Origin: Octopus sinensis
Taxonomy: Eukaryota
Reading direction: 5' to 3'
NCBI RefSeq assembly: GCF_006345805.1
Contig: NW_021835680.1
Span: 1-50,712, forward strand
DNA: 50,712 nt
Position numbers and translations under genes: made by a program. The notes under the pieces were generated by a model. It was not told where the DNA came from and ran no database searches. It was given only the letters and a program-made list of their open reading frames with translations. Positions within the stretch are counted from its first letter, which is position 1; each line of letters begins with the position of its first letter. Shown piece by piece: positions 6,205-50,148 of this stretch.

Positions 6205-8395
6205 TTTATGATGGTGGTGGTGGTGGTGGTGGTGGGGTGGTGGAGGAGGAGGAGATGAAGAAAAAGAAGAGAGAGAAGTAAGAAAGAAAGAAAGAAAGAA
6301 AGAAAGGAGCAATAGAGATTTGGAAAGAAAAAGTATGATCAACAAAGCCAAATGGACTGAGAGAGGGTAATGTAGATGGTGATGATGATGGTGGGGGGGT
6401 AATGGTGGAGGGGGTAATGGTGGTGGTGGTGGTTGGTGGTGATGGTGGTTGTGGTGGTGGTGGTGGTGGTGGTGATGGTGGTTGTGGTGGTGGTGGTGGT
6501 GGCGGTGATGGTAGTGGTGGTGGTGGTGGTGGGGAGGTGGTGGTGCTGGTGATGGTGGTGGTGATGGTGGTGGTGGTGGTGGTGGTGGTGGTGGAGGTGG
6601 TGGTGGTGTGGTGGTGGTGGTAATGGTGGTGGTTATGGTGGTGGTGGTGGTGGTGGTGGTGGTTGTGGTGGTGGTGGTGGTGATGGTAGTCGTGGTGGTG
6701 GTGGTGGGGTGTGGTGTGGTGGTGGTGGTGGTGGTTATGGTGGTGGTGGTGGTTGGTGGAGTTATGGTGTGGTGGTGGTGATGGTAGTGGTGGTGGGTTG
6801 GTGGTGGTGGAGGTGGTGGTGGTGGTGGTGGTGGTGGTGATGGTGGTGGTTATGGTGTGGTGGTGGTGGTGGTGGTGGTGGTGGTGGTGGTGATGGTGGT
6901 GGTGGTGGTGGTGGTGGTGATGGTGGTGGTGGTGGTGATGGTAGTGGTGGTGGTGGTGGTGGTGGTGGAGGTGGTGATGGCGGTGGTGATGGTGGGTGGT
7001 GACAATGATGATGATAATGGGATGGATGTGGAGACTGATGGTGGTGAAGACAGTGATGATGATGACGGTGATGATAAGATGATGGTGGTGGTGGTGGTGA
7101 TAAAGATGACGATGATGATGATGATGGTGGTGGAAGTAGTGATTATGATGATGATGATGATGATGATGCTGTTGACGAGAATGACAATGATAACAGCCAT
7201 GGTTAATGATGAGAGGATACTCAGCAGAGGCAGGAAATTAGTGGTGATGGATGGATGGAGAGAAGGCAGTGATGGCGGTGATGACGGTTGTCATCGTCAT
7301 CGCAGTACTTCGTGATGACGATGGGTGGAGGGTGGGGGGGTTTCTACGCAATGTAGCGGCAATCATGAACATAAACGTTGAGTACAAAAACGGTGGTGAT
7401 GGTGGTAGTGGTGGAGGAGGTGGTGGTGGTGGTGATGGTGTGGTGGTGGGGTGGTGGTGGTGGTAATGGTGGTGTGGTGGTAATGGTGGTGGTGTGGTGG
7501 TGGTGATGATGGTGGTGGTGGTGATGGTGGTGGTGGTATGGTGGTGGGTTGGTGGTGGTTGGTGATGGTGGTGGTGGTAATGGTGGTGGTGGTGGGGTGG
7601 TGGTGTGGTGGTGGTGGTGGTGGTGGTGGTGATGGTGGTGGTGGTGGTGGTGGTGGTGGTAATGGGGTGGTGGTGGTAATGGTGGGGGGGTGGTGGTGGT
7701 GGTGATGATGGTGGTGGTGGTGATGGTGGTGGTGGTAATGGTGGTGGGGGGGTGGTGGTGGGGTGGTGGTGGGGTGGTGGTGTGGTGGTGATGATGGTGG
7801 TGGTGGTGATGGTGTGGTGGTAATGGTGGTGGGTGGTGGTGGTGTTGATGGTGGTGGTGGTGGTGGTAATGGTGGGGGTGTGGTGGTGGTGATGATGGTG
7901 GTGGTGGTGGTGATGATGTGGTGGTGGTGGTAATGGTGGTGGTGGTGGAATGGTGGTGGGTGGTGGTGGTGGTGATGATGGTGGTGGTGGTGATGGTGGT
8001 GGTGGTATGGTTGGTGGTGGTGGTAATGGTGGTGGTGGTGGTGGTGTGGTGATGGTGGTGGTGGTAATGGTGGTGGTGGTGGTAATGGTGGTGGGTGGTG
8101 GTGGTGGTGGTGGTGGGTGGTGGTAGTGGTGGAGGAGGTAGTGGTGGGGGGTTGTGATGGTGGGGTGGTTGTGATGGTGGGGTGGTAATGGTGGTAGGAG
8201 TTGTGATGGTGGTTGTGGTGGTAATGGTGGGGGATTGTGGTGGTGGTGGGAGTTGTGGTGATGGTGGTGGTGGTGGGGTTGTGGTTGTGGTGGTGGTGCT
8301 TCTCTTAGTGGTGGTGGTAGTGGTGGTGCAGCTGCTGCTGCTGTTCCCAGTGTTGTTGTTGTTGGTGGTGGTGGTGTTGGTAGTGGTATCAAACA
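6205..8395. repeat. ~2.2-kb (GGT)n/(GAT)n low-complexity tract
   Basis: Direct; interrupted by a ~200-bp more complex island at 7200-7400. Confidence 0.95.
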
Positions 8396-12035: not shown

Positions 12036-12849
12036 CATAACAACAACAACAACAATAATAATAATAACAAAATAAAGATCAGTTAAATAGTGCAGGTGTT
12101 TTACTGGCAAAAATATGACCATCTCGGATAATAACAATATATGTTTCAACACATGGTTTCACATCAAGAATTTTACAAAACAAATATATAAATGTAAATA
12201 ATAAGGTTAGTTACAAGAAATGAACTGCTGCTCTTTCATCTATTTATGCAAAAGAAAGTCTTCAAATTTTCCAATGAAATGAAGTGAAATATTTTATCTA
12301 TGTGACTACTTTTAAGATTTTGTTGTTATTTTAGAAAGAAGTCTCTTCCCTGATTGTGTCTTCGACTGTAATCTATTCATTCTGACATCTTGTACACATG
12401 AATAAATAATAGAACAGTTTTGGTAAAAGAACCAAAAGTTCTTGAAATCTTGTGTTGCAAATGATTTAGCTCATTTACAACACTATCTTCACAAAACTAG
12501 TCACCTGATAACCGTTCTTCAGGTAAACAAGCTAGGTAAATAGACTTTTAGAGCTAGCAGGAAACAGGAAAGTCAACTGGGTGTGAATACGAAGTGAACC
12601 TCTGAAGAAGGATTAACCATCCGACATAGATTAACAATTAATGACTTCAAGATAAGAGCTTGATGGTCTTTGAAATGCAAGAAAATCCAGAGAAGGAACA
12701 TATGGAAACTATAAATTCTGTCAACCGGATTTAGGGAACAAGAAATACCAGAAGGCATTGAGGACAAAGATGAAGAAGAGGAGAGAGGGACTTGTAACAT
12801 AGAGGACAGCTGGGAATTTTTTTGGAGACAACTTGCTGCAAACCAAAGA

Positions 12850-12989
12850 CCAGAGCTGAGGACTATAATAGAAGACACTTGCCCAAGGTGCCACACAGTG
12901 GGACTGAACCCAGAACCATGTGGTTGGCAAGCAAGCTACACCTCTACCTATCTTCACATGTATTTGTAAAGATATATATATATATATAT

Positions 12990-13048
<59 letters not shown>

Positions 13049-13290
13049 ACATACACACACATACACATATATATATATATATATATACATATATCTTTTA
13101 TCTTTTACTTGCTTCAGTCATTAGACTATGGCCATACTGGAGCATCACCTACAAGAATTTTTAGTTCAATGAGTATAACTCTGGTTCTTATTGTATTGGC
13201 TTCTTTTGTCAAACCACTAAATTATGGGGAGGTCAACACACCAACACCGGTTGTCAAGCAGTGGGGGGGAAACACAGACACAAAGACCAG
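12850..13290 (-). mobile_element. Two SINE B fragments (head 12850-12948; tail 13093-13290) separated by TA/TG repeats
   Basis: Match to the full-length B copy at 21510-21928. Confidence 0.75.
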
Positions 13291-14510: not shown

Positions 14511-15209
14511 CAAACAGAAAGACAGATAGATTGATAGATAGATAGAGACATACATATATATATATATATATATATACACATACATAGATATACACACACA
14601 TATCCAACCCATGCCAGCAGGGAAAACGAACGTTACATGAAGCTAATGATAATCACACACACGCTCATATATATATATATAAATACATGTGTATCTTAGA
14701 TGAAGTTAAATATGTATGGTCAAAAGAATAGATATACATAAATCCTTAAATACTTCTCTGTATGTGTGTGTGTGTGTGTGTGTGTATAAGTGCACATTGA
14801 GAAAACAGTCACGTGCAAGGAAATGATATGATAAAGCATGTGACATCAGCCACACAGTTTTATCACTCTCCTGTTCTATAAAGTTGGAGAGATTGCTTCT
14901 TCTTGTTGTTGCTGTTATAACAACAAACAGACTTGGCATCCAAAAGCAGTTCTACACACGGATGATGGTGTCTTAATGGTAAATAACCAAAACTATTATA
15001 GAAAGATTTTATATAATTCGCAAAGAATTCAGAGGGGTCATCAAAGACAATTTAAAACCAGAAGTGGTTAGCTTCCTCATTATCTTGTTAAATGATGTAT
15101 TATCATTTAGCAGCTTCAGATAAATGGCTAGCAAGCAAATAACTTAGAGAAATGGACACTGACCATTTTAAGAAACATTTGACAGAGAATGTTAATAAAA
15201 GATTATGAT

Positions 15210-15612
15210 GGTACAGGAATGGCTGTGCGATAAGTAGCTTGCTTACCAAACCACATGGTTCTGGGTTCAGTCCCTCTGCGTGGAACCTTGGGCAAGTGTT
15301 TTCTACTATAGCTTTGGGCCAACCAAAGCCTTGTGAGTGGATTTGGTAGATGGAAACGGAAAGAAGCTAGTCGTATGTGTGTGTGTGTGTGTGTGTTTGT
15401 GTGTGTGTATGTTTGTGTGTCTGTATTTGTCCCCAACATCGCTTGACAACTGATGTTGGTGTGTTTACATCCCCATTAACTTAGCAGTTTGGCAAAAGAG
15501 ACCAATAGAATAAGTACTAGGTTTCCAAAGAATAAGTCTTGGGGTTGATTTGTTCGACTAAAGGCAGTGCTCCTGCATGGCCACAGTCAAATGATTGAAA
15601 CAAGTAAAAGAT
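15210..15612 (+). mobile_element. SINE family B, full length (a second, 5'-truncated copy follows at ~15633-15925)
   Basis: tRNA-like head tggctgtgcgataag...gggttcagtccc, central (TG)n, tail gcatggccacagtcaaatgattgaaacaagtaaaag. Confidence 0.9.
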
Positions 15613-18662: not shown

Positions 18663-19945
18663 GTCATCTGATAAGTTCTGTCCGATTTTACCATTTTTAA
18701 AAATTGAATGAAATTTAATAGTATTTTAGAATGTCTAATGGAATTAAAAATTATTTTTATGCATTTGTCTACATTAAAATATTATTTTATAGAATAACAG
18801 AATTAAAATTTATTTGATTAAAACCCTTTCTAACAAGGAAGTATCCAAAGAGCATTTAAGGCACATAATGCTTTATGAGTACAAAAAAGGAAACTCCTCA
18901 GCTGAAGCAACTTGAAACACATTCAGTTTATGGGAAAGAATGCTTGAATGAAAGAACTTTCAGAAGATGGTTTGCAAAATTCAGAAGTAGCGATTTCAGC
19001 CTTGAAGATGAAGATCGAACAGGACGTCCTGTTGAGTTTGATGATAAGCTCCTTGAGGCATTACTGGAAGAAAATCTTGCATGAGCAGTTGAAGAATTGG
19101 CAATAAAGCTGAGTTAAAACCATACAACTGTTCATCATCATCTTCAACAACTTGGAAAGATTCCTAAACTTGGAAAATGGATGTCTCATGAATTGTCCAA
19201 AAGCAACCACAAATCCCGAGTTGACCTCAGCTTTTCTCTCCATCCTCGTGAACTCATTTCACCCCTTTTGGATAGACTTGTGACTGGTGATGAAAAATGG
19301 ATCTTCTATCGAAATGTTAAACGTCGTAAACAGTGGCTTGGTAAAAGGGAAAAAGCTCAACCACAACCAAGAAGGGAACTTCATGGGAAAAAGGTTTTTT
19401 TCTCTATCTGGTAGGATTGCAAAGGAGTAATTCCCTTTAAATTGGTACCACCTAATGCAACAATCAAAGTTCAAGTCTACTGCCAGCAATTAGAGCATCT
19501 GTACCAAGCTTTGAAGAAAAAAAGACCTGCTTTAGTGAATCAAAAAGGAGTGATGTTTCATCAGGACAATGCATGACCCCCACACTGCAAAGATCGCATC
19601 ACAGAAGATCGAAGAGCTTGGTTGGGAAAAAATTCTTCATCCACCTTATTCTCCTGACCTTGCTCCTTCAGACAAACCATTTGTTTCGTAGTTTACAGAA
19701 TCATTTGGGGGACATAACTTTCGTAACCCAGGAGGAGGTCGAAACTGACATTTCAGTGTTCTTCGCTTTGCAACCAAAAGACTTTTACATGATGGGATTA
19801 AAAAACTTCTAAATAGATGGAAGGCAGTCATAGATAACCAGGGAAAGTACATTGATGATTAAATTTCAATTAAATATAACATTTAATCACTTGTTTTCCT
19901 TATTCAAAATTCAAAGCGCCGAAAATATTTTGGCAAATTAAATTT
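18659..19945 (+). mobile_element. Mariner (DD34D) DNA transposon, decayed, inserted at a (TA)n tract
   Basis: Left TIR-like tcaggtcatctgataagttctgtccgatttt follows (TA)n. The right end is degenerate and its boundary approximate. Confidence 0.85.
18835..19862 (+). pseudogene. Mariner transposase pseudogene
   Basis: Motifs: RHIMLYEYKKG, RRWFAKFRSSDFSLEDEDRTGRP (HTH), WMSHEL, TGDEKW, HQDNA, HPPYSPDLAPSD, RWKAVIDNQGKYIDD*. Several stops and frameshifts; start codon appears mutated to AAG. Confidence 0.95.
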
Positions 19946-21509: not shown

Positions 21510-21721
21510 ATACTCTTTTACTCTTTTATTTGTTTCCGTCATTTGACTGTGGTCATGCTAGAGCACCACCTTTAGTAGAGCAAAATTAACCCCAGGACTT
21601 ATTCTTTGTAAGCCTAGTACTTATTCTATCGGTCTCTTTTGCCGAACTGCTAGGTTATGGGGTGTAAACACACCAGCATTGGTTGTCAAGCGATGTTGGG
21701 GGGACAAACACAGACACACAA

Positions 21722-21758
<37 letters not shown>

Positions 21759-21928
21759 CATATAAACGACGGGCTTCTTTCAGTTTCCGTCTACCAAATC
21801 CACTCACAAGGCTTTGGTCGGCCCGAGGCTATAGTAGAAGACACTTGCCCAAGGTGCCATGCAGTGGGACTGAACCAAGAACCATGTGGTTGGTAAGCAA
21901 GCTACTTACCACACAGCCACTCCTGCAC
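21510..21928 (-). mobile_element. SINE family B, full length, low divergence
   Basis: Reverse complement of the 49205-49605 copy over its whole length. Confidence 0.92.
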
Positions 21929-22736
21929 CCATTTTTTGTTTATTTTTGGTCATTTTTTTGTTTATTTTTCTTCTTTTTTTTTGCTAAATAAACTCACACA
22001 CTATATAGTCATTCTTCACTCATTTATTATTGTTCTTATTCAAACTCATGTCCAATATCTGGAAATCTTTCATCACACCTCTGTGACCTCCTCAGCAGCA
22101 CTTTCCATTGTCATGTGTGCTTTTCTTGCTCTGCTTATTCCATTCTCTCTTATTTAATAATTTTTACACAACAAAGCAAGGAGGTTCATACTTTCACAAA
22201 GAAAGAATAAAAAAATACAAACAGAAAAGTAAAACAGTATTTGCATATTAAATAAATAAATATATAATTTCCCTGGTGTAATATTCCATGAAAAACCAAA
22301 TTATTATCATCATCATCATCATTATTATGCCAAAAACTATTATTACTGTTTATGTTATAATTATTATTGTTATTATTATTGTTCTTGTTGTTTAGGTTTT
22401 CTTGGCTCTAATTTTAAAATTCCTTATTGCTAATCATTTGCAGTAAAATAAAATAAAATAATATAATAAAAAAAATAATAAAACTTCTTCCCTTTACCTA
22501 ATTATATTTTCAATTGATTCATTTCAATTTTTTTTTTTTTTTGTTTCCGTCCCGGCAGATATTTTAAATGAATTATTTAAATTGTTCTATTTTGTTTTGT
22601 GTTTATTCTAGGGTGTTTTGTTTAATATTTTGTTTCTGAAATATAAGTTGACAGAAAATAAAATATAAATTTGCGAAATATTGGACAAACTTGTCAAATA
22701 AATAGTAAATAAGGAATAATAATTATAATAATAATG

Positions 22737-28474: not shown

Positions 28475-28870
28475 GGTGCCCCAGCATGGCCACAGTCAAA
28501 TGAGAAGCAAGTAAAAGTATACTTTTACTTGTTTCAATCATTTGACTGTGGCCATGCTGGGGCACCGCCAAGTAAAAGTATACTTTTACTTGCTTCAATC
28601 ATTTGACTGTGGCCATGCTGGGGCACTACCTTGAAGAGTTTTTAGTCAAACAAATCAATCCCCAGGGCTTACTTTTTTAAACCTGATACTAATTTTATCA
28701 GTCTTTTTTGGTGACTTGCTAAGTTACAGGGGATGTAAACACACCAACACCAGTTATCAAGCAGTGGTAGGGACAAACACAGATACAGAGACACACATAG
28801 ATATATACAAATATATACATGTCAGGCTTCTTTCAGTTTCCCTCTACCAAATCCACTCACAAGGCTTTTA
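28475..28870. mobile_element. SINE B tails in a palindromic tail-to-tail arrangement, followed by a minus-strand SINE B body
   Basis: aagtaaaagta|tacttttactt palindromes at 28509-28530 and 28570-28591. Confidence 0.8.
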
Positions 28871-28959
28871 TCTGTCTGTGGCAGTATTTACAAAGTGATT
28901 GAAGGACCAAGAGTCTCACGCATTGGGAATTACCAAACTGGCTCCAAATTAACAGGTCT

Positions 28960-29140
28960 ATCTCAGTATCCGCTCAGTCGAAGTCGACTCTCGGTCACTC
29001 GTTGGATCAGTGTCCTCCAGTCAGTTCTATCCTGGGCCGCTTCTTTCAGATTGGCTATGTCCATTCCGGTATCACTCTTGATGGTGTCAAGCCAGCGGGT
29101 TCTTGGTCGGCCTCTTCCTCTCTTGCCAATGACCATTCTA
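28960..29140 (-). mobile_element. RTE/BovB-like LINE 3' end of ORF2
   Basis: GKRGRGRPRTRWLDTIKSDTGMDIANLKEAAQDRTDWRTLIQRVTESRLRLSGY* parallels the BovB C-terminus (GKRRRGRQRMRWLD...DREAWR...V.KSRTRLSD*). Confidence 0.85.
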
Positions 29141-30489
29141 CCCCTAACCAAACACAAAACACACACACACATACACGACAGGCTTCTTTCAGTTTCCGTT
29201 TCCCAAATCTATTCATGGAGCCACATAAAATCACCCATGCTGGTTCCACAGTAAAAGCACCCAGTACACTTTTTAAATCAGTTGGCATTAGGAAAGGCAT
29301 CCAGCTGTAGATACCATGCCAGGACAGACAAATGGAAGCTGGGCGGATCTTCAGCTGCCCAGTTCCTGTCAAAGTGTCCAACTCATATAAGCCTGGAGAG
29401 CGGATGGCTATATGATGATGATGGTGATGATGGTGATGATGATACATATTATTTGATAAGAATAGTGTTGACAGTGACTTAGCAGTCTGATGAAGACTAA
29501 GCAAGCCAAACCTTCGAAATCACTATCATCACTCTTTTGGTCATAAAACGATAAATATGTACTCAACAAACTGACCAATTCGTCATTTTAATATAAAATT
29601 GCCTTTAGAAAACTCAACAAAAAACCAAACATTACGACACACACATACATATCTACACATTTACAAACACACACATTTCTTATTCCATTTATTATTATAT
29701 ATTTTTCATAACTTTTTCAATATTTTATTATTATTTTTATGGGTTTTTTTTTTTTTTGCTATTTTTATTATTTTTACTCCCATTTTCCAGCCTGCAATTA
29801 GAATCCCTGCTTTCCAGTTCCTACCTCCCATCCTGTCATCCAAACTCAACAATCTTCAGAGAGATTTTTTCCTACCTCTTTGTTTAATTATTACATTACA
29901 CATTCAATAATCAATTTTTAATTACATAATTCTTAAATTATGAAAATTTTAATTACCTAATTCTTATTGTACCTTGTTAATTCTACCGTACATATATCTG
30001 CATATGAACATATCTATATCTATATCTATCTATATATATATATATATATAGATATATATATTATATACTCACATTTAATGTGTATTAATACAATAATGGG
30101 CAGTGTAATCTTATGCCTATACACACATACATGCACATACATGGGTATATAATATACACACACACATATACGCACATCTATGTGTGTGTGTTTGTATCTG
30201 TATATATCTGTCTATATTTGTGCGAGTGTCTAGGAAGATGTAATTTTGTCTTAGGGCGCATGTGTGAATGTGTGTATATGTGTACACACCTCTTTGTGTA
30301 TTGATAAGCACACAGATCACTAGAGATAAATTAACAGACAGATTTGCAGTGAGATATATATGAATAGAAACGTGTGTGTGTGTAAGCATAATTATGTAAG
30401 CATTTATGTATATATATAGATATATGCATGAATAGAGATGGAAATGTATATGCATATATATGAATGCTCCTGTGTGGGTTTATGTGGTC

Positions 30490-31339: not shown

Positions 31340-31961
31340 GTGTTGTTTTAATGTCCACTTTTCCATGCTTGCATGGATCAGGTGGAATTCATTGAGGCAA
31401 ATTTTCTACAGCTGGATGCCCTTCCTGTCACCAACCATCACTTGTTTTTGTGTAAGGTAGTATTTCCCCCAAGACCAGAGGTGTTTTCACTGTGACACTT
31501 ATGACTGTCACATGATGTGAGGACAGGGAGGCGCAAACACACACATCTACACACACATCTGCATACACATACATATACACACATATACATACACATATCT
31601 ACACACCACACACATCTGCACACACACACATATACACACATATACATACACAAATCTACACAAACACACACATCTACACACACACACATTTACACACATC
31701 TACACACACACACACATATACACACACATATCTACACACACACACACACATATACACACAAACACACACACATACACACAACTACACTCACTCATATATA
31801 TACGACAGGCTTCTTTCAGTTTCCATCAATCAAATCCACTCACAAGGTTTTGGCCAGCCTGGGCCTAAAATAGAAGACACTTGCTCAAGGTGTCACAGAG
31901 TGGAATCGAACCCTATAGCACTTGGTTGGAAAATGTGCTTCTTAACCACACAGCCACTCCA
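31340..31961 (-). mobile_element. SINE B head plus (CA)n plus RTE-type tail
   Basis: Head at 31803-31961; tail motif tttctacagctggatgcccttcc at ~31405. Confidence 0.7.
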
Positions 31962-32178
31962 GAGATTTAAACATGCTGGGTTCAAATCCTACCAAGTTCA
32001 ACTTTACCATTTATTCTTCCAAGTGTCATAAAATAAGGATCAATTCAAGCACTTTGCCTCTACCCTCCCAAAAAGTTAGGGGTTTCTAACAGACAACACT
32101 ATCTTTGTAACAGTAAACCCCTTCAAAATCTATAATCATTGGTTTCTTTTCACAGAAAAACACAGAAATAGTTACGAT

Positions 32179-33344: not shown

Positions 33345-33375
<31 letters not shown>

Positions 33376-33436
33376 GGCGGTGCCCCAGCATGGCCACAGC
33401 TCAAGAGCTGAAACTGGAAAACATAAACAAACATAA

Positions 33437-33482
<46 letters not shown>

Positions 33483-33491
33483 ACACACACA

Positions 33492-34035
33492 GGTGCAGGT
33501 ATGGTCAAGTTGTAAGAAGCCTGTTTCCAAACCATATGGTTCCAGCTTCAGTCCCACTGTGTGGCACACCTCAGGCAATTGTCTTCTATTGTAGCCTTGG
33601 GTCGACCAAAGCCTTGTGAATGAGTTTGGTAGATGGAAACTGAAAAGAAGCTTGTCGTATATGTGCATGCGTGCGAGTGTGTGTGATTCTTAATGAATCC
33701 TTCAAACTAAAGTGTGTGTGTGCACATATCTGTGTGTGTGTATGTATGTGCACATATCAGTGTGTGTGTGTGTGTGTGTGTGTGCTTGTGTCTCCTTGTC
33801 TTGGCATCTCGTAATAGTTGTAAATGAGTGTCACTCTCATACAAGCAGTGCCATTCATTACCAATATTCTGTGGAAACATGTCTGCTCATAGAGAAATAT
33901 AACTTTGCTTGGAGACAATTAAGGGTTTGCAACAGGAAGGGCATCCATCCATCCATATAAAACATGCATCAATAAACTCCGTCCGCCCCTTGAGTGCATG
34001 GAAAAGCAGATGTTAAATCAATAATGATGATGAAA
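33492..34035 (+). mobile_element. SINE B head plus (TG)n plus RTE-type tail
   Basis: Head 33492-33660; tail aggaagggcatcc...gcatggaaaagcagatgttaaatc...gatgatga. Confidence 0.7.
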
Positions 34036-39821: not shown

Positions 39822-39934
39822 AGTGGTGATATTCAGTTCATGACAGTAGAATTCCAGGTTCAATCTCACAGTGCAGTACCTTAGACTTGTGACATGCTTT
39901 GCAGACTCGTAAGTGAATTTGGTAGAAGGAAATT

Positions 39935-40935
39935 GCACAGCAAAGAAGCTTGCTTTGCAACCACACAGTTCCAGGTTCAGTCCCACTTTGTGACACCTTG
40001 ATCAAGTGTTTTCTACAATGGCCTCAAGCCAGCTAAAGACTCATGAATGGATTTGGTAAACAGAAACTGAAAGAAGCCTGTCCTATATGCATGTATGTAT
40101 GTGTGTGTGTGTGCATTTTGTGTCTCTTCCCTCCTCTACAACCACTTGACAACCATTGTTAGTTTGTTTACTTCCCTCTCACTTGGCAGTGACCAATAAA
40201 ATAAGAGCCAAACCGGAAAGTAAGAACTGGTGTTGCCCCAGAATGGCCTGCTGTCCAATGAGCGAAACAAGTAAAAGATACGTGAAAGGGTGGGCATAGC
40301 TATTTTATTGAATTCTTCATTATTTTCAAAATTAATCAAAATGAAGGCAGTGTATTTCAAGAGAAATATGGTAACGTAAAGGTTTTATGTTCCAGAGAAA
40401 TCTAAGGTGGGGGCCAGGTGGGGGAATTAGAAGCAGTTTTTAATCCCAGAGATGTTTCATATTAGATTTGAAATCTAGGTGTCAAGCTGGCAGAATCGTT
40501 AGGACACCAGACAAAATTCTTAGCGGCATTTTGTGTGTCTTCATGTTCTAAGTTCAAATTCCACCAGGATCAACTTTGCCTTATATTCTTCCAGAGTCGA
40601 TAAAATTAAGTACCAGTTATGCACTGAGGTTAATGTAATCAACTTATCCCCTCCCCCAATATTGTTGGCCTTATGCCAAAATTTGGAACCAATATTAGAT
40701 TTGAGCTTAGACAAAAACCTGTTCTGACAGAATAAGGGTGGTGGTGGTGGTGGTGGTAGGTCTAAGGCAGCGGTGAAGATGCATGGCTTAATGGTTAGGC
40801 TGTTGGGATCACAATCAGATGGTCACAGGTTCAATTCCTGAAATGGGCAGCAAGTTGTATTCTTTAACAAGACATTTCTTTTTATGCTTCGCCAGTCTAC
40901 TCAGCTGGAAACGAGTACCAGCTGCATACTGGGTC
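39935..40935 (+). mobile_element. Cluster of diverged SINEs: B (~39935-40300), A (~40484-40700), C (~40775-40935)
   Basis: Family motifs recognisable in each segment. Confidence 0.7.
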
Positions 40936-41049: not shown

Positions 41050-41480
41050 CAAACTGTGGTCATTCTACCTGCTAGAAATAACAGTCAAATCTTTCTCTCT
41101 CTCAAATCCAAGTCTGTCATCTCAACAAATAGAATAACACATTATATAATGTATTCCAAGATATACCGTTCCAAAATTGACGACCGAGGTAGTCACTCTA
41201 CCTACTAGAAATAACAACCAAATTTCTCTCGTATCCCACTTATATGGAATGACACATTACATAATATAGAACTAGATACACTGTTTCAAAATCGATGACA
41301 GAAATGAAAAAGGGTGGATGCAATGAAGTGTGCCACCCTGAATACCCAACAAACAATCTGCAGGGTGTTGGAACATGAAAGAAAAAACAGCTTTTGTTGA
41401 TTCTTCAAATGATGGTTTTGCCTTTTTGAGTTTTGGTTCTGGTTTTGCTGTCAGCAACGTACTTACATTAATTAACATAC
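41050..41480. repeat. Left arm of an inverted repeat pair (right arm 47785-48235)
   Basis: Core gtaagtacgttgctgacagcaaaaccagaaccaaaactcaaaaa.gcaaaaccatcatttgaagaatcaacaaaagctg is near-identical in opposite orientation. Confidence 0.85.
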
Positions 41481-41662
41481 ACTTATGCTCTCTCTCTCTC
41501 TCACACACACACGTGTCCATACATGTTCACAGACATACATCGACATGTACACATACCTATATGCACACACAGACACATACACATGAAGTTGACTTGGTGT
41601 GTGTGTATAGATACATAGATATATGTAATAATTCACTTTAAGGACTATAGCAAAGCATACAC

Positions 41663-44062
41663 CTTCACCATAATCATTCCCACCCTGTCCATAATCAATC
41701 CCACCCTGGCCATAATCATTCCCACCCTGGCTATAATCATTTCCACCCTGGCTATAATCATTCCCACCCTGACCATAATCACTTCCACCCTGTCCATAAT
41801 CATTTCCACCCTGTCCATAATCATTCCCACACTGACCATAATCACTTCCACCCTGTCCATAATCGTTCCCACCCTGGCCATAATCACTTCCACCCTGTCC
41901 ATAATCATTCCCACCCTGACCATAATCACTTCCGCCCTGTCCATAATCATTCCCACCCTGGCCATAATCATTCCCACTCTGTCCATAATCACCTTGCCCA
42001 TAATCATTCCCACCCTGGCCATAATCATTCCCACCCTGGCTATAATCATTCCCACCCTGTCCATAATCATTCCCACCCTGACCATAATGGATTCCACCCT
42101 GTCCATAATCATTCCCACCCTGGCTATAATCATTTCCACCCTGTCCATAATCATTCCCACCCTGGCTATAATCATTTCCACCCTGTCCATAATCATTCTC
42201 ACCCTGGCCATAATCACTTCCACCCTGTCCATAATCATTCCCACCCTGGCTATAATCATTTCCACCCTGGCTATAATCATTTCTACTCTGACCATAATCA
42301 TTCCCACCCTGACCATAATCACTTCCACCCTGTCCATAATCATTCCCACCCTGACCATAATCACTTCCACCCTGTCCATAATCATTCTCACCCTGGCCAT
42401 AACCATTCCCACCCTGACCATAATCATTTCCACCCTGGCTATAATCATTCCCACCCTGACCATAATCACTTCCACCCTGTCCATAATCATTCCCACCCTG
42501 ACCATAATCACTTCCGCCCTGTCCATAATCATTCCCACCCTGGCCATAATCAATCCCACCCTGGCCATAATCATTCCCACCCTGGCTATAATCATTTCCA
42601 CCCTGTCCATAATCATTCCCACACTGACCATAATCACTTCCACCCTGTCCATAATCGTTCCCACCCTGGCCATAATCACTTCCACCCTGTCCATAATCAT
42701 TCCCACCCTGACCATAATCACTTCCGCCCTGTCCATAATCATTCCCACCCTGGCCATAATCATTCCCACTCTGTCCATAATCACCTTGCCATAATCATTC
42801 CCCCCTGGCCATAATCATTCCCCCACCTGGCTATAATCATTCCCACCTGTCCATAATCATTCCCACCCTGACCATAATGGATTCCACCCTGTCCATAATC
42901 ATTCCCACCCTGGCTATAATCATTCCACCCTGTCCATAATCATTCCACCCTGGCTATATCATTTCCACCTGTCCATAATCATTCCCACACTGACCATAAT
43001 CACTTCCACCCTGTCCATAATCGTTCCCACCCTGGCCATAATCACTTCCACCCTGTCCATAATCATTCCCACCCTGACCATAATCACTTCCGCCCTGTCC
43101 ATAATCATTCCCACTCTGTCCATAATCACCTTGCCCATAATCATTCCCACCCTGGCCATAATCATTCCCACCCTGGCTATAATCATTCCCACCCTGTCCA
43201 TAATCATTCCCACCCTGACCATAATGGATTCCACCCTGTCCATAATCATTCCCACCCTGGCTATAATCATTTCCACCCTGTCCATAATCATTCCCACCCT
43301 GGCTATAATCATTTCCACCCTGGCTATAATCATTTCTACTCTGACCATAATCATTCCCACCCTGACCATAATCACTTCCACCCTGTCCATAATCATTCCC
43401 ACCCTGACCATAATCACTTCCACCCTGTCCATAATCATTCTCACCCTGGCCATAACCATTCCCACCCTGGCCATAATCATTCCCACCCTGACCATAATCA
43501 TTTCCACCCTGGCTATAATCTTTCCCACCCTGACCATAATCACTTCCACCCTGTCCATAATCATTCCCACCCTGACCATAATCACTTCCACCCTGTCCAT
43601 AATCATTCCCACTCTGGTTATAATCATTCCCACCCTGGTTATAATCATTCCCACCCTGACTATAATGACTTCAACCCTGTCCATAATCATCCCCACCCTG
43701 GCTATAATCATTCCCATCCTGACCATAATCATTCCCACCCTGACCATAACCATTCCCACCCTGGCCATAATCATTTCCACCCCTGTCCATAATCATTCCC
43801 ACCCTGACCATAATGGCTTCCACCCTGGCCATAATCATTTCCACCCTGTCCATAATCATTCCCACACTGACCATAATGACTTCCACCTTGTCCATAATCA
43901 TCCCCACCCTGGCTATAATCATTCCCACCCTGGCCATAATCATCCCCACCCTGGCTATAATCATCCCCACCTTGGCTATAATCATTCCCCCCCTGTCCAT
44001 AATCATTCCCACCCAGACTATAATCATTCCCACCCTGGCCATAACCATTCCCACTCTGACTT
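41663..44062 (-). CDS. Candidate giant repeat exon encoding (GGNDYGQ)n, a Gly/Tyr/Gln-rich low-complexity domain
   Basis: Commonest variants are synonymous only in this frame; 15-bp units keep the frame; acceptor catctcattttacAG at 44064-44063; donor AAG|GTGTAT or GGT|GTATGC at 41662/41660. Several 1-bp indels in C-runs break the frame. Confidence 0.5.
41667..44057. repeat. 21-bp tandem array CCATAATCATTCCCACCCTG(G/T/A), ~114 units, with higher-order blocks
   Basis: Direct; landmark variants (accttg at 41991, 42783, 43128) recur. Confidence 0.98.
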
Positions 44063-44722
44063 CTGTAAAATGAGATGTGCAGCTCCCCTTCCACAAGAAA
44101 CTTGTTCTGTTCTGGCCCCTTCTCTCTCACTTTAGCCCCTCATCCCATAGCATAAGGTTGCCTTGTTTTTCTGCTATAGCCCCACACCTGTATGGGGAGA
44201 GCTGGTATCACGAGAAAGAAAATAGCACCCAGTACGTACATCCTGCAAAGTGGTTTGTATTAGGAAAGGTGACCAACAGGTGAAACCATACAAAAACTGA
44301 GACATTGGAGCAAGGGGTCCGCGGACCCATCGGGGCATCTCAAAACATGGACATAAAGTGACGATGATGATGATGATGACAATGACTATGATAATAGTGG
44401 TGGTGGTGGTGGTGGTGGTGGTGGTGGTGGTGTGGTGGTGGTGAACACACATTCATTCAGAGACGGACAGACAGACCGATCATCAACAAAGACACCATTT
44501 ACTCAATTCATTTTTATTTGTTTTCTACAATTTTACCCCTTTTATTTTTATTATTGATAAAAATAATTTTTAAGAACTTTCAAAAAACAATTTGGTTCTT
44601 TCTTGACAAAAAAAATGTTATCACTTCGTTTTGATAATTTTCTTTATTTTCACAGTTAAATTAATTTTTTGCCAAGTAATCAGATTTTTTTGCCATCTAT
44701 GTGTGAACATGTGATATATGCG

Positions 44723-46775: not shown

Positions 46776-47784
46776 CAAATCAACTTAATGTCCTGTCTCC
46801 CTCTCTATCAACCTCTTCTCTCTACATTCTGTCCCCTCTCTTCCCCCCCCTCTCTCTATACCCCTCTCCCTCTCTCCCCCTCTCTCTATTCTCTCACCTC
46901 TTCTTCCCCCACACCTTCTCCCTATATCTCTTTCGATGGATGCTACAACACATCTTCCCTGACTCCATCCAACTTAACTCTGCCATTCTTCAATTTTCTC
47001 ATTTTCTTCCTCCATTTTACACACACGCATGCAAGTACGCTTCCGTGGTTGCATGTGTGCATATTTGTGCATCTGTGTGCACAGCTATGCATATGCGTGA
47101 GTGCATGTATGTCCGTGTACATGTATTACCTGTGTGTTCATGAATACTTTCATAATATGCATTTGTGTATGCCTTCGTGTACGCTCAGGTATGCGTGTGC
47201 ATAAGTATGCACGTGGATGTGCATAACTGTATGTGCATGCAGTTGTGCACCTGGGCGTATTTGTGCTTAGATGCATGCTTACCTTTGCGTGCACGTGCAT
47301 GTATTTCTGTATGCTTTTGTAGTATAAGTATTTGTTTATATTTTGTATATGCTATACGCTTATGCGCATAAGTGTGTTTGTGTGTGAGTGTGTGTGTGCG
47401 TGTGGTGTGTGTGTGTGCGGTGTGTTGAGTGTGTGTGTGTGGTGTGCGTTGTGTGCGTTGGTTGTTGTGTGTGTGGTGTGTGTGTGTGTGTGTTGTGCGT
47501 TAGTGTTTTTTGTGTGTTGTGTGGTGTGTGTGTTGTGTGCGTGCGTGTGTGTGTGTGTGTTGTGGGTCAGGTTGTTTGTGTGGTGTTTTTTTGTGTGTGG
47601 TGTGTGTGTGTGTGCGTTGCGTGTGTGTGTGTGCTTGTTTGTGTTAGTGTGTGTGTGTGTGCGTGCCGTGTGTGTGTGTGTGTGTGTGTTAGTGTTTGTG
47701 TGTGTTTGTGTGTGGTGTGTTGTGCGTGTGTGTTTGTGTGTGTGTGGTGTGTGTGTGTGTGTGTGTGTGTTTGTGCATGTGTGT

Positions 47785-48235
47785 ACGTTAATTATTGTAA
47801 GTACGTTGCTGACAGCAAAACCAGAACCAAAACTCAAAAAAGCAAAACCATCATTTGAAGAATCAACAAAAGCTGTTTTGGTTTTCTTTCATGTCGCAAC
47901 ACTCTGCAGATAGTTTGTTGGGTATTCAGGGTGACACAGTTCATTGCTCACTTTAGACGTCAATTTTAAAATAGTGGATCTAAAACTACATTATGTAATG
48001 CGTCATTCCACTTTTTTAAGATGACAGACCGGGATTTGTGTGAAATTTCGTTGCTATTTCTAGCAAATAAAATCACCACTTCAGCGACAAATTTTCAAAC
48101 TGTATATATAGGACAATATTACGTAATATATTGTTCCATTGAGTGGGATTTGAGCAAGATCTGGCTGTTATTTCCAGCAGATACAATGACTATATGGTTG
48201 ACATATTGTCTGAAACAAAACAATATTAACTGTGG
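47785..48235. repeat. Right arm of the inverted repeat pair
   Basis: See 41050-41480. Confidence 0.85.
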
Positions 48236-48877: not shown

Positions 48878-49097
48878 GATCGCAGTTTCGATTCCTAGAC
48901 TAGGCATTGTGAGTGTTTATTGTGCGAAAACACCTAAAGCTCTACGAGGCTCTGGCAGGGGGTGGTGGTGAACCCTGCTGTACTCTTTCACCACAACTTT
49001 CTCTCACTCTTTCTTCCTGTTTCTGTTGTACCTGTATTTCAAAGGGCCAGCCTTGTCATACTCTGTATCATGCTGATTCTCCCCAAGGACTACGTTA
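48878..49097 (+). mobile_element. 5'-truncated SINE D body fused to a family-C tail
   Basis: aaaacacctaaagctctacgaggctctggcaggg... then gttgtacctgtatttcaaagggccagccttgtca, matching 49966-50038. Confidence 0.8.
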
Positions 49098-49117
49098 TGG
49101 GTTAAGTTCTGACCTTT

Positions 49118-49186
49118 GTGGATCTTAAAATGTCTTTTGAGGCCTTTGTTAGATTTGCAGACCTTCTGGCATACATTGCATTGAAA
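49118..49186 (-). other. Isolated C2H2 zinc-finger coding fragment (FQCNVCQKVCKSNKGLKRHFKIH)
   Basis: Exact C-x2-C-x12-H-x3-H spacing; sandwiched between two SINEs. Confidence 0.6.
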
Positions 49187-49204
49187 CCTCCTGGCATACA
49201 TTGC

Positions 49205-49605
49205 ACAGAGTGGCTGTGTGGTAAGTAGCTTGCTTACCAACCACATGGCTCTGGGTTCAGTCCCACTGCATGGCACCTTGGGCAAGTGTCTTCTACTATA
49301 GCCTCGGGCCGACCAAAGCCTTGTGAGTGGATTTGGTAGACGGAAACTGAAAGAAGCCCGTCGTATATATGTATATATATATATATATGCATGTGTGTGT
49401 TTGTGTGTCTGTGTTTGTCCCCCTAGAATTGCTTGACAACCGATGCTGGTGTGTTTATGTCCCCGTTACTTAGCGGTTCGGCAAAAGAGACCGATAGAAT
49501 AAGTACTGGACTTACAAAAAAGAATAAGTCCCGGGGTCGAGTTGCTCGATTAAAGGCGGTGCTCCAGCATGGCCGCAGTCAAAATGACTGAAACAAGCAA
49601 AAAAG
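49205..49605 (+). mobile_element. SINE family B, full length, young
   Basis: CpG-rich; near-identical to the reverse complement of 21510-21928. Confidence 0.92.
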
Positions 49606-49828
49606 AAAAAAAGAAAAAGAAAAGATATATATAGGCAGATTAGTTGGTGGAGGTTCGTTTTCCATGGGTTCGCAAATGAGGTTTGAGCCCAGCAAAAGAC
49701 AGGCATGGTCTGTCACAAACGGTGCATGCAAAAAGGTCATTGTGATTCACCTCCTCAATCATAACGTTTTTCCTCAAATTTCTCTTGAGATAAAAACAGA
49801 TATACACACATATTTATACACATGCAGT

Positions 49829-50148
49829 GAGGGCGCGTGGCTTAGTGGTTAGGGCATTCGGCTCATGATCGTAAGGTTGTGAGTTCGATTCCCGGCGACG
49901 CGTTGTGTCCTTGAGCAAGACACTTTATTTCACGTGGCTCCAGTCCACTCAGCTGGCAAAAATGAGTTGTACTTGTATTTCAAAGGGTAAGCCTTGTCAC
50001 TCTCTGTGTCACGCTGATTATCCCCGAGAACTACGTTAAGGGTACACGTGTCTGTGGAATGCTCAGCCATTTGCACGTTAATTTCACGAGCAAGCTGTTC
50101 CGTTGATTCGGATCAGCTGGGACCCTCGTCGTCGGAACCGGCGGAGTC
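49829..50148 (+). mobile_element. tRNA-derived SINE family C (CORE-like centre)
   Basis: A box TGGCTTAGTGG (49838-49848), B box GAGTTCGATTCC (49881-49892), CORE-like tccttgagcaagacacttta...ccagtccactcagctg, T-rich end. Confidence 0.88.

What the first reader, a model, noticed from the sequence alone, without database searches (positions are those of the whole stretch)
41663..44062. A 2.4-kb 'minisatellite' that mutates like a coding exon for (GGNDYGQ)n, a FET/prion-like or structural Gly-Tyr repeat
Seen: four of six frames are open across the 21-bp unit, but the ORF track mostly shows the (MIMDRVG)n, (IIIPTLS)n and (HNHSHPG)n readings. The two most frequent polymorphic sites are the G/T/A at the unit end and ttcc vs tccc. 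They fall on Gly third positions (GGC/GGA/GGT; GGG/GGA) only in the minus frame G-Q-G-G-N-D-Y, and are replacement changes in every other open frame. Rarer variants (AAC/AAT, GGC/GGT) are also silent, although some replacement variants exist (N>S, G>S, G>E, G>C). Shortened units are 15 bp (YGQGDYG), so they keep the frame. The array begins right after a polypyrimidine-AG and ends at a GT donor-like site. Frame-breaking indels sit in C homopolymers (42785-42970, ~43670-43785), which is typical of long-read error. Established: [G/S/D]Y[G/S]Q repeats form the phase-separating low-complexity domains of FUS/EWS/TAF15, and Gly/Tyr repeats typify cephalopod structural proteins. Inference: an ~800-aa, ~114-repeat exon of an unannotated protein.
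Basis: partly seen in the sequence, partly recalled or inferred. Interest (0 to 1): 0.8.

Follow-up and report, generated by a model that had tools for sequence, protein, structure and literature searches.

The report
21-bp minisatellite that looks like coding
A real 2.4-kb array of 115 copies of a 21-base unit could be read as a (GGNDYGQ)n protein, but the evidence that it is a working exon is weak, so it is best treated as an ordinary minisatellite until RNA data say otherwise.

Summary
The array is real: period 21, 115 units, 41660-44061, G-rich on the minus strand. Four of six frames are open. The two most variable columns are silent only in the minus frame GQGGNDY. The burst of frame-breaking indels at 42777-42974 looks like assembly error: that block otherwise matches another copy base for base.

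With a +1 G in unit 14, it stops the proposed ORF in its first fifth.

The silent-site excess depends on how changes are counted. Calibrated p is about 0.01-0.03 by spanning-tree events, 0.10 by distinct variants and 0.07-0.14 by occurrences. Without the two hot columns, 4 of 19 variant types are silent, which is the neutral expectation.

The splice-like edges exist on both strands, and the minus "donor" GT is the unit's own GGT. There are no unique coding flanks, start codon, neighbouring domain exons or homologous protein. No FUS/EWS/TAF15 match was found.

Similar G-[N/S]-D-Y heptads are annotated as coding in Pomacea, Patella and Lymnaea, so the coding reading stays plausible.

Estimated probabilities: never-coding minisatellite 0.45, live exon 0.3, decayed exon 0.15.

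The parts
41660..44061 (-). Whole 21-bp tandem array, 115 full or near-full units plus a 10-nt half unit. Minus-strand consensus GGC CAG GGT GGG AAT GAT TAT (G Q G G N D Y).
   Evidence: TRF. Unit-by-unit parse. 99 matches against 0 expected. GC skew -0.69.
43774..44061 (-). Units 1-13, the most diverged end of the array. They read GQGGNDY in one frame. The open frame reaches 26 codons upstream (to 44139) without any ATG.
43767..43788 (-). Unit 14, 22 bp. An extra G in a G run (GGG to GGGG) shifts the GQGGNDY reading by +1.
   Evidence: It could be a homopolymer error or real; this cannot be decided here.
43671..43673 (-). In-frame TGA in unit 19 (GGA CAG GGT TGA AGT CAT TAT). It comes from a G>T substitution that is unique in the array.
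   Evidence: (ORF 43671..44096 ends here).
42957..43670 (-). Uninterrupted GQGGNDY reading of 238 codons, from the end of unit 19 through unit 52.
42777..42974 (-). Units 53-62: a burst of 7 one-base deletions plus one complex GG-T-GGGGG site. Otherwise this block is an exact copy of units 91-100. Probably an unpolished patch of the assembly.
   Evidence: 7 one-base deletions plus one complex site (1 insertion and 1 substitution), no other substitution, and the following 170 nt are 100% identical.
41664..42776 (-). Units 63-115 plus the half unit: a clean GQGGNDY reading (369 aa used as query). Composition is 38.5% Gly, 14% each Tyr, Gln and Asp, 10% Asn. The frame then runs 63 codons through (CA)n junk to a stop at about 41472.
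41817..42188 (-). Higher-order block of 18 units (pattern IXIXYKZXBabBcKSdSH). It recurs at 42609-42974 and, with one unit pair and one further unit missing, at 42975-43283. This is the signature of recent unequal exchange or segmental duplication.
41985..41999 (-). 15-bp unit GGG CAA GGT GAT TAT, an in-frame 6-bp deletion. Copies at 43122-43136 and 42777-42790 lie in the other higher-order blocks, so all three trace to one event.
44063..44070 (.). CTGTAAAA on the plus strand, TTTTACAG on the minus strand. It is an acceptor-like AG for a minus-strand exon starting at 44062, and equally a donor-like GTAAAA for a plus-strand reading.
   Evidence: Read directly.
41657..41663 (-). AAG|GTGTAT, a donor-like site on the minus strand. 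The GT is columns 8-9 of the last, half-degenerate unit (GGTGAAGGTG against GGTCAGGGTG), and every unit carries the same GGT.
41059..41512 (+). Interspersed repeat, followed by a degenerate (CA)n tail that runs up to the array. An inverted copy lies at 47751-48190 (74% identity), preceded by a (GT)n tract.
   Evidence: blastn. Microsatellites listed.

Best explanation
This is a strand-asymmetric, G-rich 21-bp minisatellite in repeat-filled intergenic or intronic DNA.

It grew by replication slippage and unequal exchange:
- A few founder units, differing at about 20 sites, were amplified first as 42-bp dimers (GGA..GGA AGT / GGT..GGG AAT).
- They were then amplified as an 18-unit block that is now present three times.
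- The oldest, most diverged units sit at one end.

The coding look follows largely from the unit itself. The unit is 7 triplets long: three GGN, one CAG and three NAT. It lacks stops in four frames. Most of its common variation sits in the N of two GGN triplets.

Shown: the array, its higher-order structure, the variation pattern and the lesions. Inferred: the growth mechanism and the absence of a protein product.
For: - Array and strand bias.
- Higher-order copies, 100% identical over 170 nt or more, and a hybrid unit (type m, which looks like K+M).
- The GQGGNDY frame is broken by a substitution-made TGA and a +1 G within the first 19 units.
- No avoidance of stops: 4.8% of possible changes make a stop, so about 1.6 are expected in 33-35 events, and 1 is seen.
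- By distinct variants, 7 of 13 possible silent changes and 15 of 50 possible replacement or stop changes are seen, Fisher p = 0.10. Without columns 3 and 12, 21% are silent, the neutral value.
- A silent share of occurrences as high as observed (58%) arises in 7-14% of neutral simulations.
- The Tyr TAT and the third base of Asp GAT never vary in 104 units. This is not what free wobble positions predict.
- The array fills the supposed exon from first to last base, with no unique coding flank and no ATG. In the annotated Pomacea and Patella repeat genes the array sits inside long unique coding sequence.
- Splice-like motifs occur on both strands.
- The flanks are an interspersed repeat and microsatellites.
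- No Pfam domain on minus-strand ORF pieces from 37 to 50.7 kb.
- No related protein beyond low-complexity look-alikes among 5.8 and 1.84 billion sequences.
- Triplet microsatellites are abundant in the window, for example (TGG)650. That offers a non-coding route to a unit length divisible by 3.
Against: - The spanning-tree event count gives 16 silent, 16 replacement and 1 stop in GQGGNDY. The raw p is 0.0003. Calibrated against neutral simulations with rate variation and recombination, it is about 0.006-0.03. No other frame shows an excess.
- Unit length and the only clear real indel (-6 bp) are multiples of 3.
- The common replacements are conservative (Gly/Ser, Asn/Ser). The Asn/Ser alternation occurs at the same heptad position in annotated Pomacea, Patella, beetle and bacterial repeats.
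- Patella XP_050410937.2 contains the exact 12-mer NDYGQGGSDYGQ.
- The same test on the annotated Pomacea coding array gives equally modest numbers: 7 silent and 6 replacement events, Fisher p = 0.078. Weak statistics therefore do not argue against coding.
- Most frame breaks look like assembly error.
Confidence: 0.45

Rival explanations
1. This is a live coding repeat exon. The minus strand would encode about 110 heptads of an acidic Gly/Tyr/Gln/Asn polypeptide, (GGNDYGQ)n, with Tyr every 7 residues and one Asp per repeat.

The likely product would be a secreted structural or matrix protein, or a low-complexity tail. The frame breaks would be assembly errors. The TGA would be an error, a null allele, or lie outside the real exon.
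For: - Frame-specific silent excess, calibrated p about 0.01-0.03.
- The 21-bp unit and the 6-bp deletion keep the frame.
- The indel patch is error-like.
- An acceptor-like ttttacAG lies 1 nt before the first unit.
- Annotated mollusc genes encode the same motif class with 21-bp DNA repeats. Pomacea PVD29824.1 has a signal peptide, about 40 copies of SSGNDYK and a Cys-rich end (L001:1992-2860). Patella XP_050410937.2 has (RDSDYGQ)n, and one of its units matches ours at 18 of 21 bases.
Against: - In-frame TGA from a substitution that is unique in the array, so it was not copied in from another unit.
- No ATG, signal peptide, unique exon flank or neighbouring domain exon.
- The splice motifs are not strand-specific.
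- No silent TAC or GAC among 104 units.
- Rare variants show no silent excess.
- No orthologue in the protein collections. This is weak evidence, because the source organism seems absent from them.
Confidence: 0.3
2. This is a decayed coding repeat. The array would have begun as, or been copied from, a coding (G-[N/S]-D-Y) heptad exon. It has since lost its gene context and now evolves as a neutral minisatellite, keeping a fading coding imprint.
For: - A silent-biased pattern among the founder units together with real lesions (TGA, +1) in the oldest units.
- No surrounding exons.
- The motif is shared with genuine mollusc genes.
Against: - No parent gene or second copy was found. No unique part of the look-alike proteins maps anywhere in the window.
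- The imprint is weak enough to be chance.
Confidence: 0.15
3. A different frame is the coding one, for example the plus-strand His-rich (HNHSHPG)n or the (IIIPTLA)n reading.
For: - These frames carry no substitution-made stop anywhere in the array.
- The plus strand has ctatAG at 41649-50 and GTAAAA at 44065-70.
- By general knowledge, His-rich repeats occur in cephalopod hard tissues.
Against: - No silent excess in these frames: HNHSHPG 6 silent and 27 replacement, p = 0.70; IIIPTLA 12 and 21, p = 0.27.
- The commonest variants are radical in these frames (Gly/Asp/Val, Ser/Phe, Pro/Ser).
Confidence: 0.03

Closest known systems
Pomacea canaliculata PVD29824.1 (UniRef: chitin-binding type-2 domain-containing protein), (SSGNDYK)~40 encoded by a 21-bp array
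   Same: - A 21-bp DNA period and a heptad with the G-N-D-Y core.
- Asn/Ser alternation at the same heptad position.
- A similar silent-to-replacement profile among units.
   Different: - The Pomacea array lies inside one exon that has a start codon, a signal peptide and 175 unique codons upstream, plus a unique Cys-rich part downstream. The window's array has no unique coding flanks.
- Lys replaces Gly-Gln, so the Pomacea repeat is not acidic overall.
- It is a predicted protein, not a verified one.
Patella vulgata XP_050410937.2 (named zinc finger CCCH domain-containing protein 4), (RDSDYGQ)9
   Same: - It contains the exact peptide NDYGQGGSDYGQ.
- One DNA unit, TAT GGA CAA GGG GGT AGT GAT, matches the window's unit at 18 of 21 bases, differing only at wobble positions.
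   Different: - Only 9 units, mostly Arg-Asp rather than Gly-Gly, and embedded in unique coding sequence.
- None of its unique sequence is found in the window.
- The match level is what shared peptide plus A/T-ending codons would give, so common descent is not shown.
FET-family low-complexity domains (FUS, EWS, TAF15)
   Same: Gly, Tyr and Gln rich, with regularly spaced Tyr. TAF15 also has a roughly 7-residue Gly/Tyr repeat (general knowledge).
   Different: - No FET chain matches at E <= 1 in the PDB sequence search.
- One Asp per heptad gives net -52 per 369 aa, against near-neutral FET domains.
- No RRM, RGG or zinc-finger exons nearby.
RNA polymerase II CTD heptads (YSPTSPS)n
   Same: Best solved-structure match, E = 2e-5. 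It is driven by Tyr at an exact 7-residue period over more than 200 residues.
   Different: Only the Tyr register is shared. There is no Ser-Pro content and no polymerase context. This is an analogy of periodicity only.
Classical G-rich hypervariable minisatellites
   Same: - Unit of 10-100 bp, with G-rich and C-rich strands (GGGTGGG in each unit, GC skew -0.69).
- Higher-order blocks, hybrid units, and greater divergence at one end.
   Different: Unit length divisible by 3, and a one-frame silent bias. An average non-coding minisatellite would show that bias in only about 1-14% of cases, depending on how changes are counted.
Agrilus planipennis FAM98B isoform X2 C-terminal tail (RGGNDYN heptads)
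   Same: The only strong hit of the word-indexed search (1.9e-32, 48% identity over 33% of the query). It has GGNDY/GGSDY heptads.
   Different: A short, irregular, Arg-containing tail of a conserved protein (Pfam PF10239 precomputed for this protein). No such domain was found in the window.

Membership tests
Protein-coding tandem-repeat exon (coding minisatellite) | Unit length and length variants are multiples of 3 | tested here: met
   21-bp unit. The 15-bp variant is a 6-bp deletion. The other length changes are 1-bp, most of them inside an error-like patch.
Protein-coding tandem-repeat exon (coding minisatellite) | One uninterrupted reading frame across the array | tested here: not met
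   As assembled there is a TGA at 43671-43673, a +1 G in unit 14 and about 9 indels at 42777-42974. The reading is split into five pieces. The patch is probably error; the TGA is not a homopolymer artefact.
Protein-coding tandem-repeat exon (coding minisatellite) | Excess of silent over replacement differences among units in one frame only | tested here: inconclusive
   Events: 16 silent, 16 replacement, 1 stop; raw p = 0.0003, calibrated about 0.006-0.03. Distinct variants: Fisher p = 0.10. Occurrences: 7-14% of neutral simulations reach the observed share. The signal rests on columns 3 and 12.
Protein-coding tandem-repeat exon (coding minisatellite) | Gene context: start codon or verified splice junctions, unique coding flanks, other exons | tested here: not met
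   No ATG upstream in frame, and junk after the array. AG/GT motifs on both strands. No Pfam domain in minus-strand ORF pieces from 37 to 50.7 kb.
Protein-coding tandem-repeat exon (coding minisatellite) | Transcript or peptide evidence | not testable with these tools
   No RNA-seq or proteome of the source organism can be reached. The organism itself could not be identified.
FET family (FUS/EWS/TAF15) | Sequence-detectable similarity to a FET SYGQ-rich, nearly uncharged low-complexity domain | tested here: not met
   PDB phmmer finds no FET chain at E <= 1; the best match is the Pol II CTD. Asp makes up 13.8% of residues, net -52 per 369 aa.
FET family (FUS/EWS/TAF15) | RRM, RGG and RanBP2-type zinc finger in the same gene | tested here: not met
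   No such Pfam hits in the window's larger ORFs or in minus-strand ORF pieces near the array. The test is limited to this 50.7-kb window and to exon pieces of 35 aa or more.
Prion-like (Q/N-rich) domain | Compositional score from a prion-domain predictor, and aggregation behaviour | not testable with these tools
   Only composition is known: Gln plus Asn is about 24%, and Gly is 38.5%. No predictor or assay is available.
Cephalopod Gly/Tyr structural proteins (for example suckerins, beak proteins) | Signal peptide plus alternating Ala/His-rich and Gly/Tyr-rich modules; detectable homology | tested here: not met
   No signal-peptide exon was found. There are no Ala/His modules in the GQGGNDY frame. 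No such protein was seen among the hits whose sequences or names I examined (about two dozen of 892 at E <= 1e-3). Module definitions are from general knowledge.
Minisatellite (tandem repeat of 10-100 bp) | Head-to-tail units of 10-100 bp with higher-order blocks and hybrid units from unequal exchange | tested here: met
   115 units of 21 bp. An 18-unit block occurs three times, with 100% identity over 170 nt or more. There is also a hybrid unit.
Minisatellite (tandem repeat of 10-100 bp) | G-rich / C-rich strand asymmetry | tested here: met
   GC skew is -0.56 to -0.69 across the array. Every unit contains GGGTGGG.

The most novel reading that the evidence does not exclude
The array is transcribed from the minus strand and translated into an acidic polypeptide of roughly 700-800 aa, with Tyr at an exact 7-residue spacing over about 110 heptads.

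That would be a new low-complexity structural, matrix or condensate-forming protein. It would belong to a so far unnamed G-[N/S]-D-Y heptad class that also appears in gastropod genes: the Pomacea chitin-binding-type protein, the Patella ZC3H4-like protein and the Lymnaea (GENDYGK)8 protein.
Probability: 0.3. Interest if true: 0.55.

Novelty: new member of a known kind. Interest (0 to 1): 0.3.

Why it matters
If it is only a minisatellite, it is ordinary. Its main use is as a caution. In short-period repeats whose length is divisible by 3, open frames, "silent" hot columns and AG/GT edges arise easily without selection. The usual within-array silent-versus-replacement test has little power, even on an annotated coding array.

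If it is translated, it would add a very long, perfectly periodic, acidic Tyr-heptad protein to the set of mollusc low-complexity materials. It would also point to a recurring G-[N/S]-D-Y heptad class that nobody seems to have described: no paper in the library holds the peptide.

The locus also marks a poorly polished spot in the assembly.

Tried and rejected
- **Homology with the clean 369-aa translation.** The word-indexed search found only a beetle FAM98B tail and one Logan protein. The full HMMER scan gave 892 hits; those I looked at (about two dozen, taken from the listed best 150) are heptad or Gly-rich low-complexity look-alikes, and none is an orthologue.
- **Pfam.** Nothing for the repeat peptide.
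- **Unique parts of the 152 hit proteins against the window.** tblastn found nothing outside the array, even at E = 20 for the three mollusc proteins.
- **Identifying the organism.** All attempts failed:
  - ORF 76-528(-) and ORF 4575-5219(+) have no relatives.
  - Exact-product look-ups failed.
  - Rfam and tRNA scans were empty.
  - The unit is absent from metagenome contigs.
- **Literature.** No paper holds GGNDYGQ or its sub-peptides in a relevant context. No paper holds the Pomacea accessions. Two keyword searches on cephalopod repeat proteins and minisatellites gave nothing specific.
- **Whole-frame Pfam scan by DNA reference.** I replaced it with concatenated ORF pieces.
- **A link between the array and the CCCH-like ORF at 76-528, prompted by the Patella "ZC3H4" name.** Rejected: the ORF is 41 kb away, has no similarity to the Patella protein and would be in the wrong order.
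- **The flanking inverted 450-bp repeats as ends of one mobile element.** Rejected: they are only 74% identical, which fits independent copies of a dispersed repeat.
Full report
**What is there**

Tandem Repeats Finder reports one array at 41668-44058 with period 21, 115.0 copies, 83% matches and score 3085. A 20-mer of the unit with up to 3 mismatches occurs 99 times, all inside the array, against 0 in shuffles.

I aligned the minus strand to a concatenated consensus. That gave 116 units between 44061 and 41660. Of these, 104 are exactly 21 bp and fall into 29 distinct types.

The minus-strand consensus is GGC CAG GGT GGG AAT GAT TAT, which reads G-Q-G-G-N-D-Y. The array is strongly strand-asymmetric, with GC skew down to -0.69.

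Four frames are open across the unit: GQGGNDY, ARVGMIM, IIIPTLA and HNHSHPG. Two have a stop in every unit. My rough estimate is that each 7-codon frame of a random unit is open with probability about 0.7, so this is expected.

**Internal structure**

I coded each distinct unit as a letter. This shows 42-bp dimers (types S and K alternating). It also shows an 18-unit block, IXIXYKZXBabBcKSdSH, present three times: at units 91-108, at units 53-70, and at units 38-52 with one unit pair and one further unit missing.

Units 1-22, at the high-coordinate end, are the most diverged. One unit (type m) looks like a hybrid of two neighbouring types found in the other copy. These features are the usual marks of growth by slippage and unequal exchange.

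**The frame breaks**

Units 53-70 and 91-108 are identical except in the first ~200 nt. There I count:
- 7 one-base deletions;
- one complex site, GG-T-GGGGG against GGG-T-GGG, scored as 1 insertion and 1 substitution;
- no other substitution.

The last 170 nt are 100% identical. Nine indel events with no clean substitution, confined to ten consecutive units, fit an unpolished long-read patch far better than biological decay.

Unit 14 (43767-43788) has one extra G in a G run. That could be an error or real.

It is in fact a G>T substitution that makes an in-frame TGA in unit 19 (GGT TGA AGT, 43671-43673). The T at that column is unique in the array, so it was not imported from another unit by mis-polishing.

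As assembled, the GQGGNDY reading is cut into pieces of 122, 151, 238, 52 and 440 codons.

**Is the variation coding-like?**

The two most variable columns are column 3 (C/T/A, 65 of 104 minor) and column 12 (G/A, 38 of 104). They are Gly wobble positions in GQGGNDY and replacement positions in every other open frame. The next two, column 14 (27) and column 1 (23), are Asn>Ser/Ile and Gly>Ser replacements.

I measured the silent excess in three ways.

| Count | GQGGNDY frame | Other frames or null |
|---|---|---|
| Minimum-spanning-tree events among unit types (101 gapless units) | 16 silent, 16 replacement, 1 stop; 20.6% silent expected; raw p = 0.0003. A 104-unit parse gave p = 0.008 with transition bias 3. 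| p >= 0.07 in the other five frames |
| Distinct variants | 7 of 13 possible silent changes seen; 15 of 50 possible replacement or stop changes seen; Fisher p = 0.10 | Without columns 3 and 12, 4 of 19 types are silent (21%), the neutral value |
| Occurrences | 108 silent, 78 replacement | See the simulations below |

Events and occurrences are not independent, so I simulated neutral arrays. The simulations used unit duplication, random mutation, gamma-distributed column rates, and optional chimeric units. They were matched to the observed counts of about 28 types and 32 events.
- A best-open-frame p of 0.0003 or lower arose in 0-0.2% of runs with even or mildly uneven rates.
- It arose in 1-3% of runs with strongly uneven rates.
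- It arose in 0.6-1.8% of runs with recombination.
- In less well matched runs with more mutations it arose in up to 18%.
- A silent share of occurrences of 58% or more arose in 7-14% of runs.

The signal is therefore real but modest. It comes almost entirely from the N of two GGN triplets.

Other points do not favour selection:
- By my own tally of the variant list, silent transitions are seen at 5 of 7 possible sites and replacement transitions at 9 of 14. Replacement transitions are therefore not depleted.
- The third bases of TAT and GAT never vary in 104 units.
- One stop-creating change is present where about 1.6 are expected, so stops are not avoided.

A non-selective route to the same pattern exists, and this part is inference. 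Out-of-register exchange among the unit's GGN triplets can only change N. The window is also full of triplet microsatellites, which could explain a unit length divisible by 3.

**A positive control**

The full HMMER scan led to Pomacea canaliculata PVD29824.1. Its gene (L001) holds a 21-bp array of 40.8 copies encoding (SSGNDYK)n.

The same test on that annotated coding array gives 7 silent and 6 replacement events (p = 0.008), and 4 silent and 5 replacement variant types (Fisher p = 0.078). That is no stronger than the result for the window, so the test has low power. Weak numbers here do not exclude coding.

The gene context differs sharply, though. In Pomacea the array lies in one exon with the start codon, a signal peptide and 175 unique codons before it, and unique sequence after it. 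In Patella vulgata XP_050410937.2, the (RDSDYGQ)9 repeat is likewise embedded in unique coding sequence.

In the window the array fills the proposed exon from its first base to its last:
- upstream the frame is open for only 26 more codons, without an ATG;
- downstream it runs 63 codons through (CA)n-derived junk to a stop.

**Splice sites**

The minus-strand ttttacAG at 44063-70 is a fair acceptor. The same 8-mer read on the plus strand is CT|GTAAAA, a donor-like site. The plus strand also has ctatAG at 41649-50.

The minus-strand donor AAG|GTGTAT uses the GGT that every unit contains, in a last unit that matches the consensus for only its first 10 bases. These edges therefore do not discriminate between strands or hypotheses.

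**Surroundings**

The left flank (41059-41512) is a dispersed repeat with a (CA)n tail. An inverted copy at 74% identity lies at 47751-48190. Long microsatellites fill 44.7-47.8 kb.

I scanned the minus-strand ORF pieces of 35 aa or more from about 37 to 50.7 kb against Pfam; the pieces for 25-37 kb were extracted but not scanned. Only a sub-threshold C2H2 finger appeared. The larger ORFs of the window gave only mariner remnants.

**Relatives**

No orthologue exists in the two protein collections. This is weak evidence, because two non-repeat ORFs of the window also find nothing. The source organism therefore seems to be missing from the collections, and I could not identify it by any route.

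What the searches do show is a recurring heptad class with a G-[N/S]-D-Y core:

| Source | Repeat |
|---|---|
| Pomacea canaliculata | SSGNDYK |
| Patella vulgata | RDSDYGQ, including the exact 12-mer NDYGQGGSDYGQ; one DNA unit matches ours at 18 of 21 bases |
| Lymnaea stagnalis | GENDYGK |
| Stick insect (Bacillus rossius) | TGNDYPR |
| Beetle FAM98B tail | RGGNDYN |
| Fungus (Coemansia) | GNNDYDQ type |
| Bacteroidales bacterium | GGNDYG / GGSDYS type |

The Asn/Ser alternation at the same position recurs in several of them. That makes the peptide plausible as a protein. It does not show descent, because the DNA match is what the same peptide with A/T-ending codons would give.

**FET or prion-like?**

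Against all PDB sequences, the best match is the RNA polymerase II CTD (E = 2e-5), through the 7-residue Tyr register alone. No FUS, EWS or TAF15 chain appears at E <= 1.

The peptide would be 38.5% Gly, about 14% each Tyr, Gln and Asp, and 10% Asn, with net charge -52 per 369 aa. By general knowledge, FET low-complexity domains are nearly uncharged.

If the array is translated, an acidic secreted matrix-type protein, as in the Pomacea case, is a better guess than a FET-like nuclear protein. This is inference.

**Verdict**

On balance I rate the hypotheses as follows:
- a minisatellite that was never coding: about 0.45;
- a live repeat exon: about 0.30;
- a decayed one: about 0.15.

The main reasons are the lack of any gene context, the array filling the supposed exon exactly, the real-looking TGA, and a silent-site signal that depends on two columns.

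The question can be settled by stranded long-read RNA data and accurate reads across the locus. Neither is available here.

Noticed in passing
window 6377-8328: A very large imperfect (TGG)n microsatellite: about 650 copies, 73% matches, with GC skew up to +0.81. On the minus strand it gives long Pro/His/Thr-rich open frames of 350-384 aa.
   Followed up: no
window 3697-4734 and 4575-5219: A 261-bp unit repeated 4 times (94% matches). Its open frame continues into a 215-aa ORF (…KWSREDSKEV…IDSNKLANIRRNIMKNK…). The ORF has no Pfam match and no relative in the protein collection. It may be an unclassified mobile-element protein with a tandemly duplicated 5' part.
   Followed up: partly
window 76-528 (minus strand): A 150-aa ATG-started ORF with a poly-Gln, Ser/Pro-rich N-terminus and one CCCH-type zinc-finger pattern (C-x8-C-x4-C-x3-H: CRYSLRQRLCTNSDCIFTH). 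It has no Pfam hit, no homologue and no exact match on record. It could be the first exon of a gene that runs off the left edge of the window.
   Followed up: partly
window 18869-19411 (plus strand): Remnants of a mariner/Mos1-type transposase, broken across frames: HTH_48 at E = 4.6e-7 and Transposase_1 at E = 5.2e-7.
   Followed up: partly
window 41059-41512 and 47751-48190: Two inverted copies (74% identity, about 450 bp) of a dispersed repeat. Each has a CA/GT microsatellite tail pointing inward, and together they bracket the array and 3.7 kb of microsatellites. They are probably independent insertions.
   Followed up: partly
window, for example 12798-13121, 15206-15475, 21668-21988, 28739-29251, 31516-32028, 33351-33689, 39841-40023, 49007-49465: Many copies, on both strands, of a short dispersed element. 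Its translation recurs as …PNPLTRLW…RHLPKVP.SGTEPRTMWL…, often next to CA/TA microsatellites. It looks like an abundant SINE-like family.
   Followed up: no
window 49007-49465, 49643-49813 and 49933-50112 (minus strand): Two C2H2-type zinc-finger-like pieces (FQCNVCQKVCKSNKGLKRHFKIH and FACTVCDRPCLSFAGLKPHLRTH). Next to them is a 78-nt direct repeat, 49025-49102 and 49966-50043, at 86% identity. The Pfam scores are below threshold.
   Followed up: partly
L001 (Pomacea), L002 (Patella), proteins P0003, P0121, P0114, P0023, P0001, P0089, P0048: Heptad repeats with a G-[N/S]-D-Y core recur in unrelated proteins of gastropods, insects, a fungus and a Bacteroidales bacterium. In Pomacea and Patella they are encoded by 21-bp DNA repeats. 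No paper in the library mentions the peptide.
   Followed up: partly
window 42777-42974: A local patch of homopolymer-length errors inside an otherwise exact repeat copy. It suggests that the assembly is poorly polished within long tandem arrays, so other repeats in this assembly may carry similar artefacts.
   Followed up: yes
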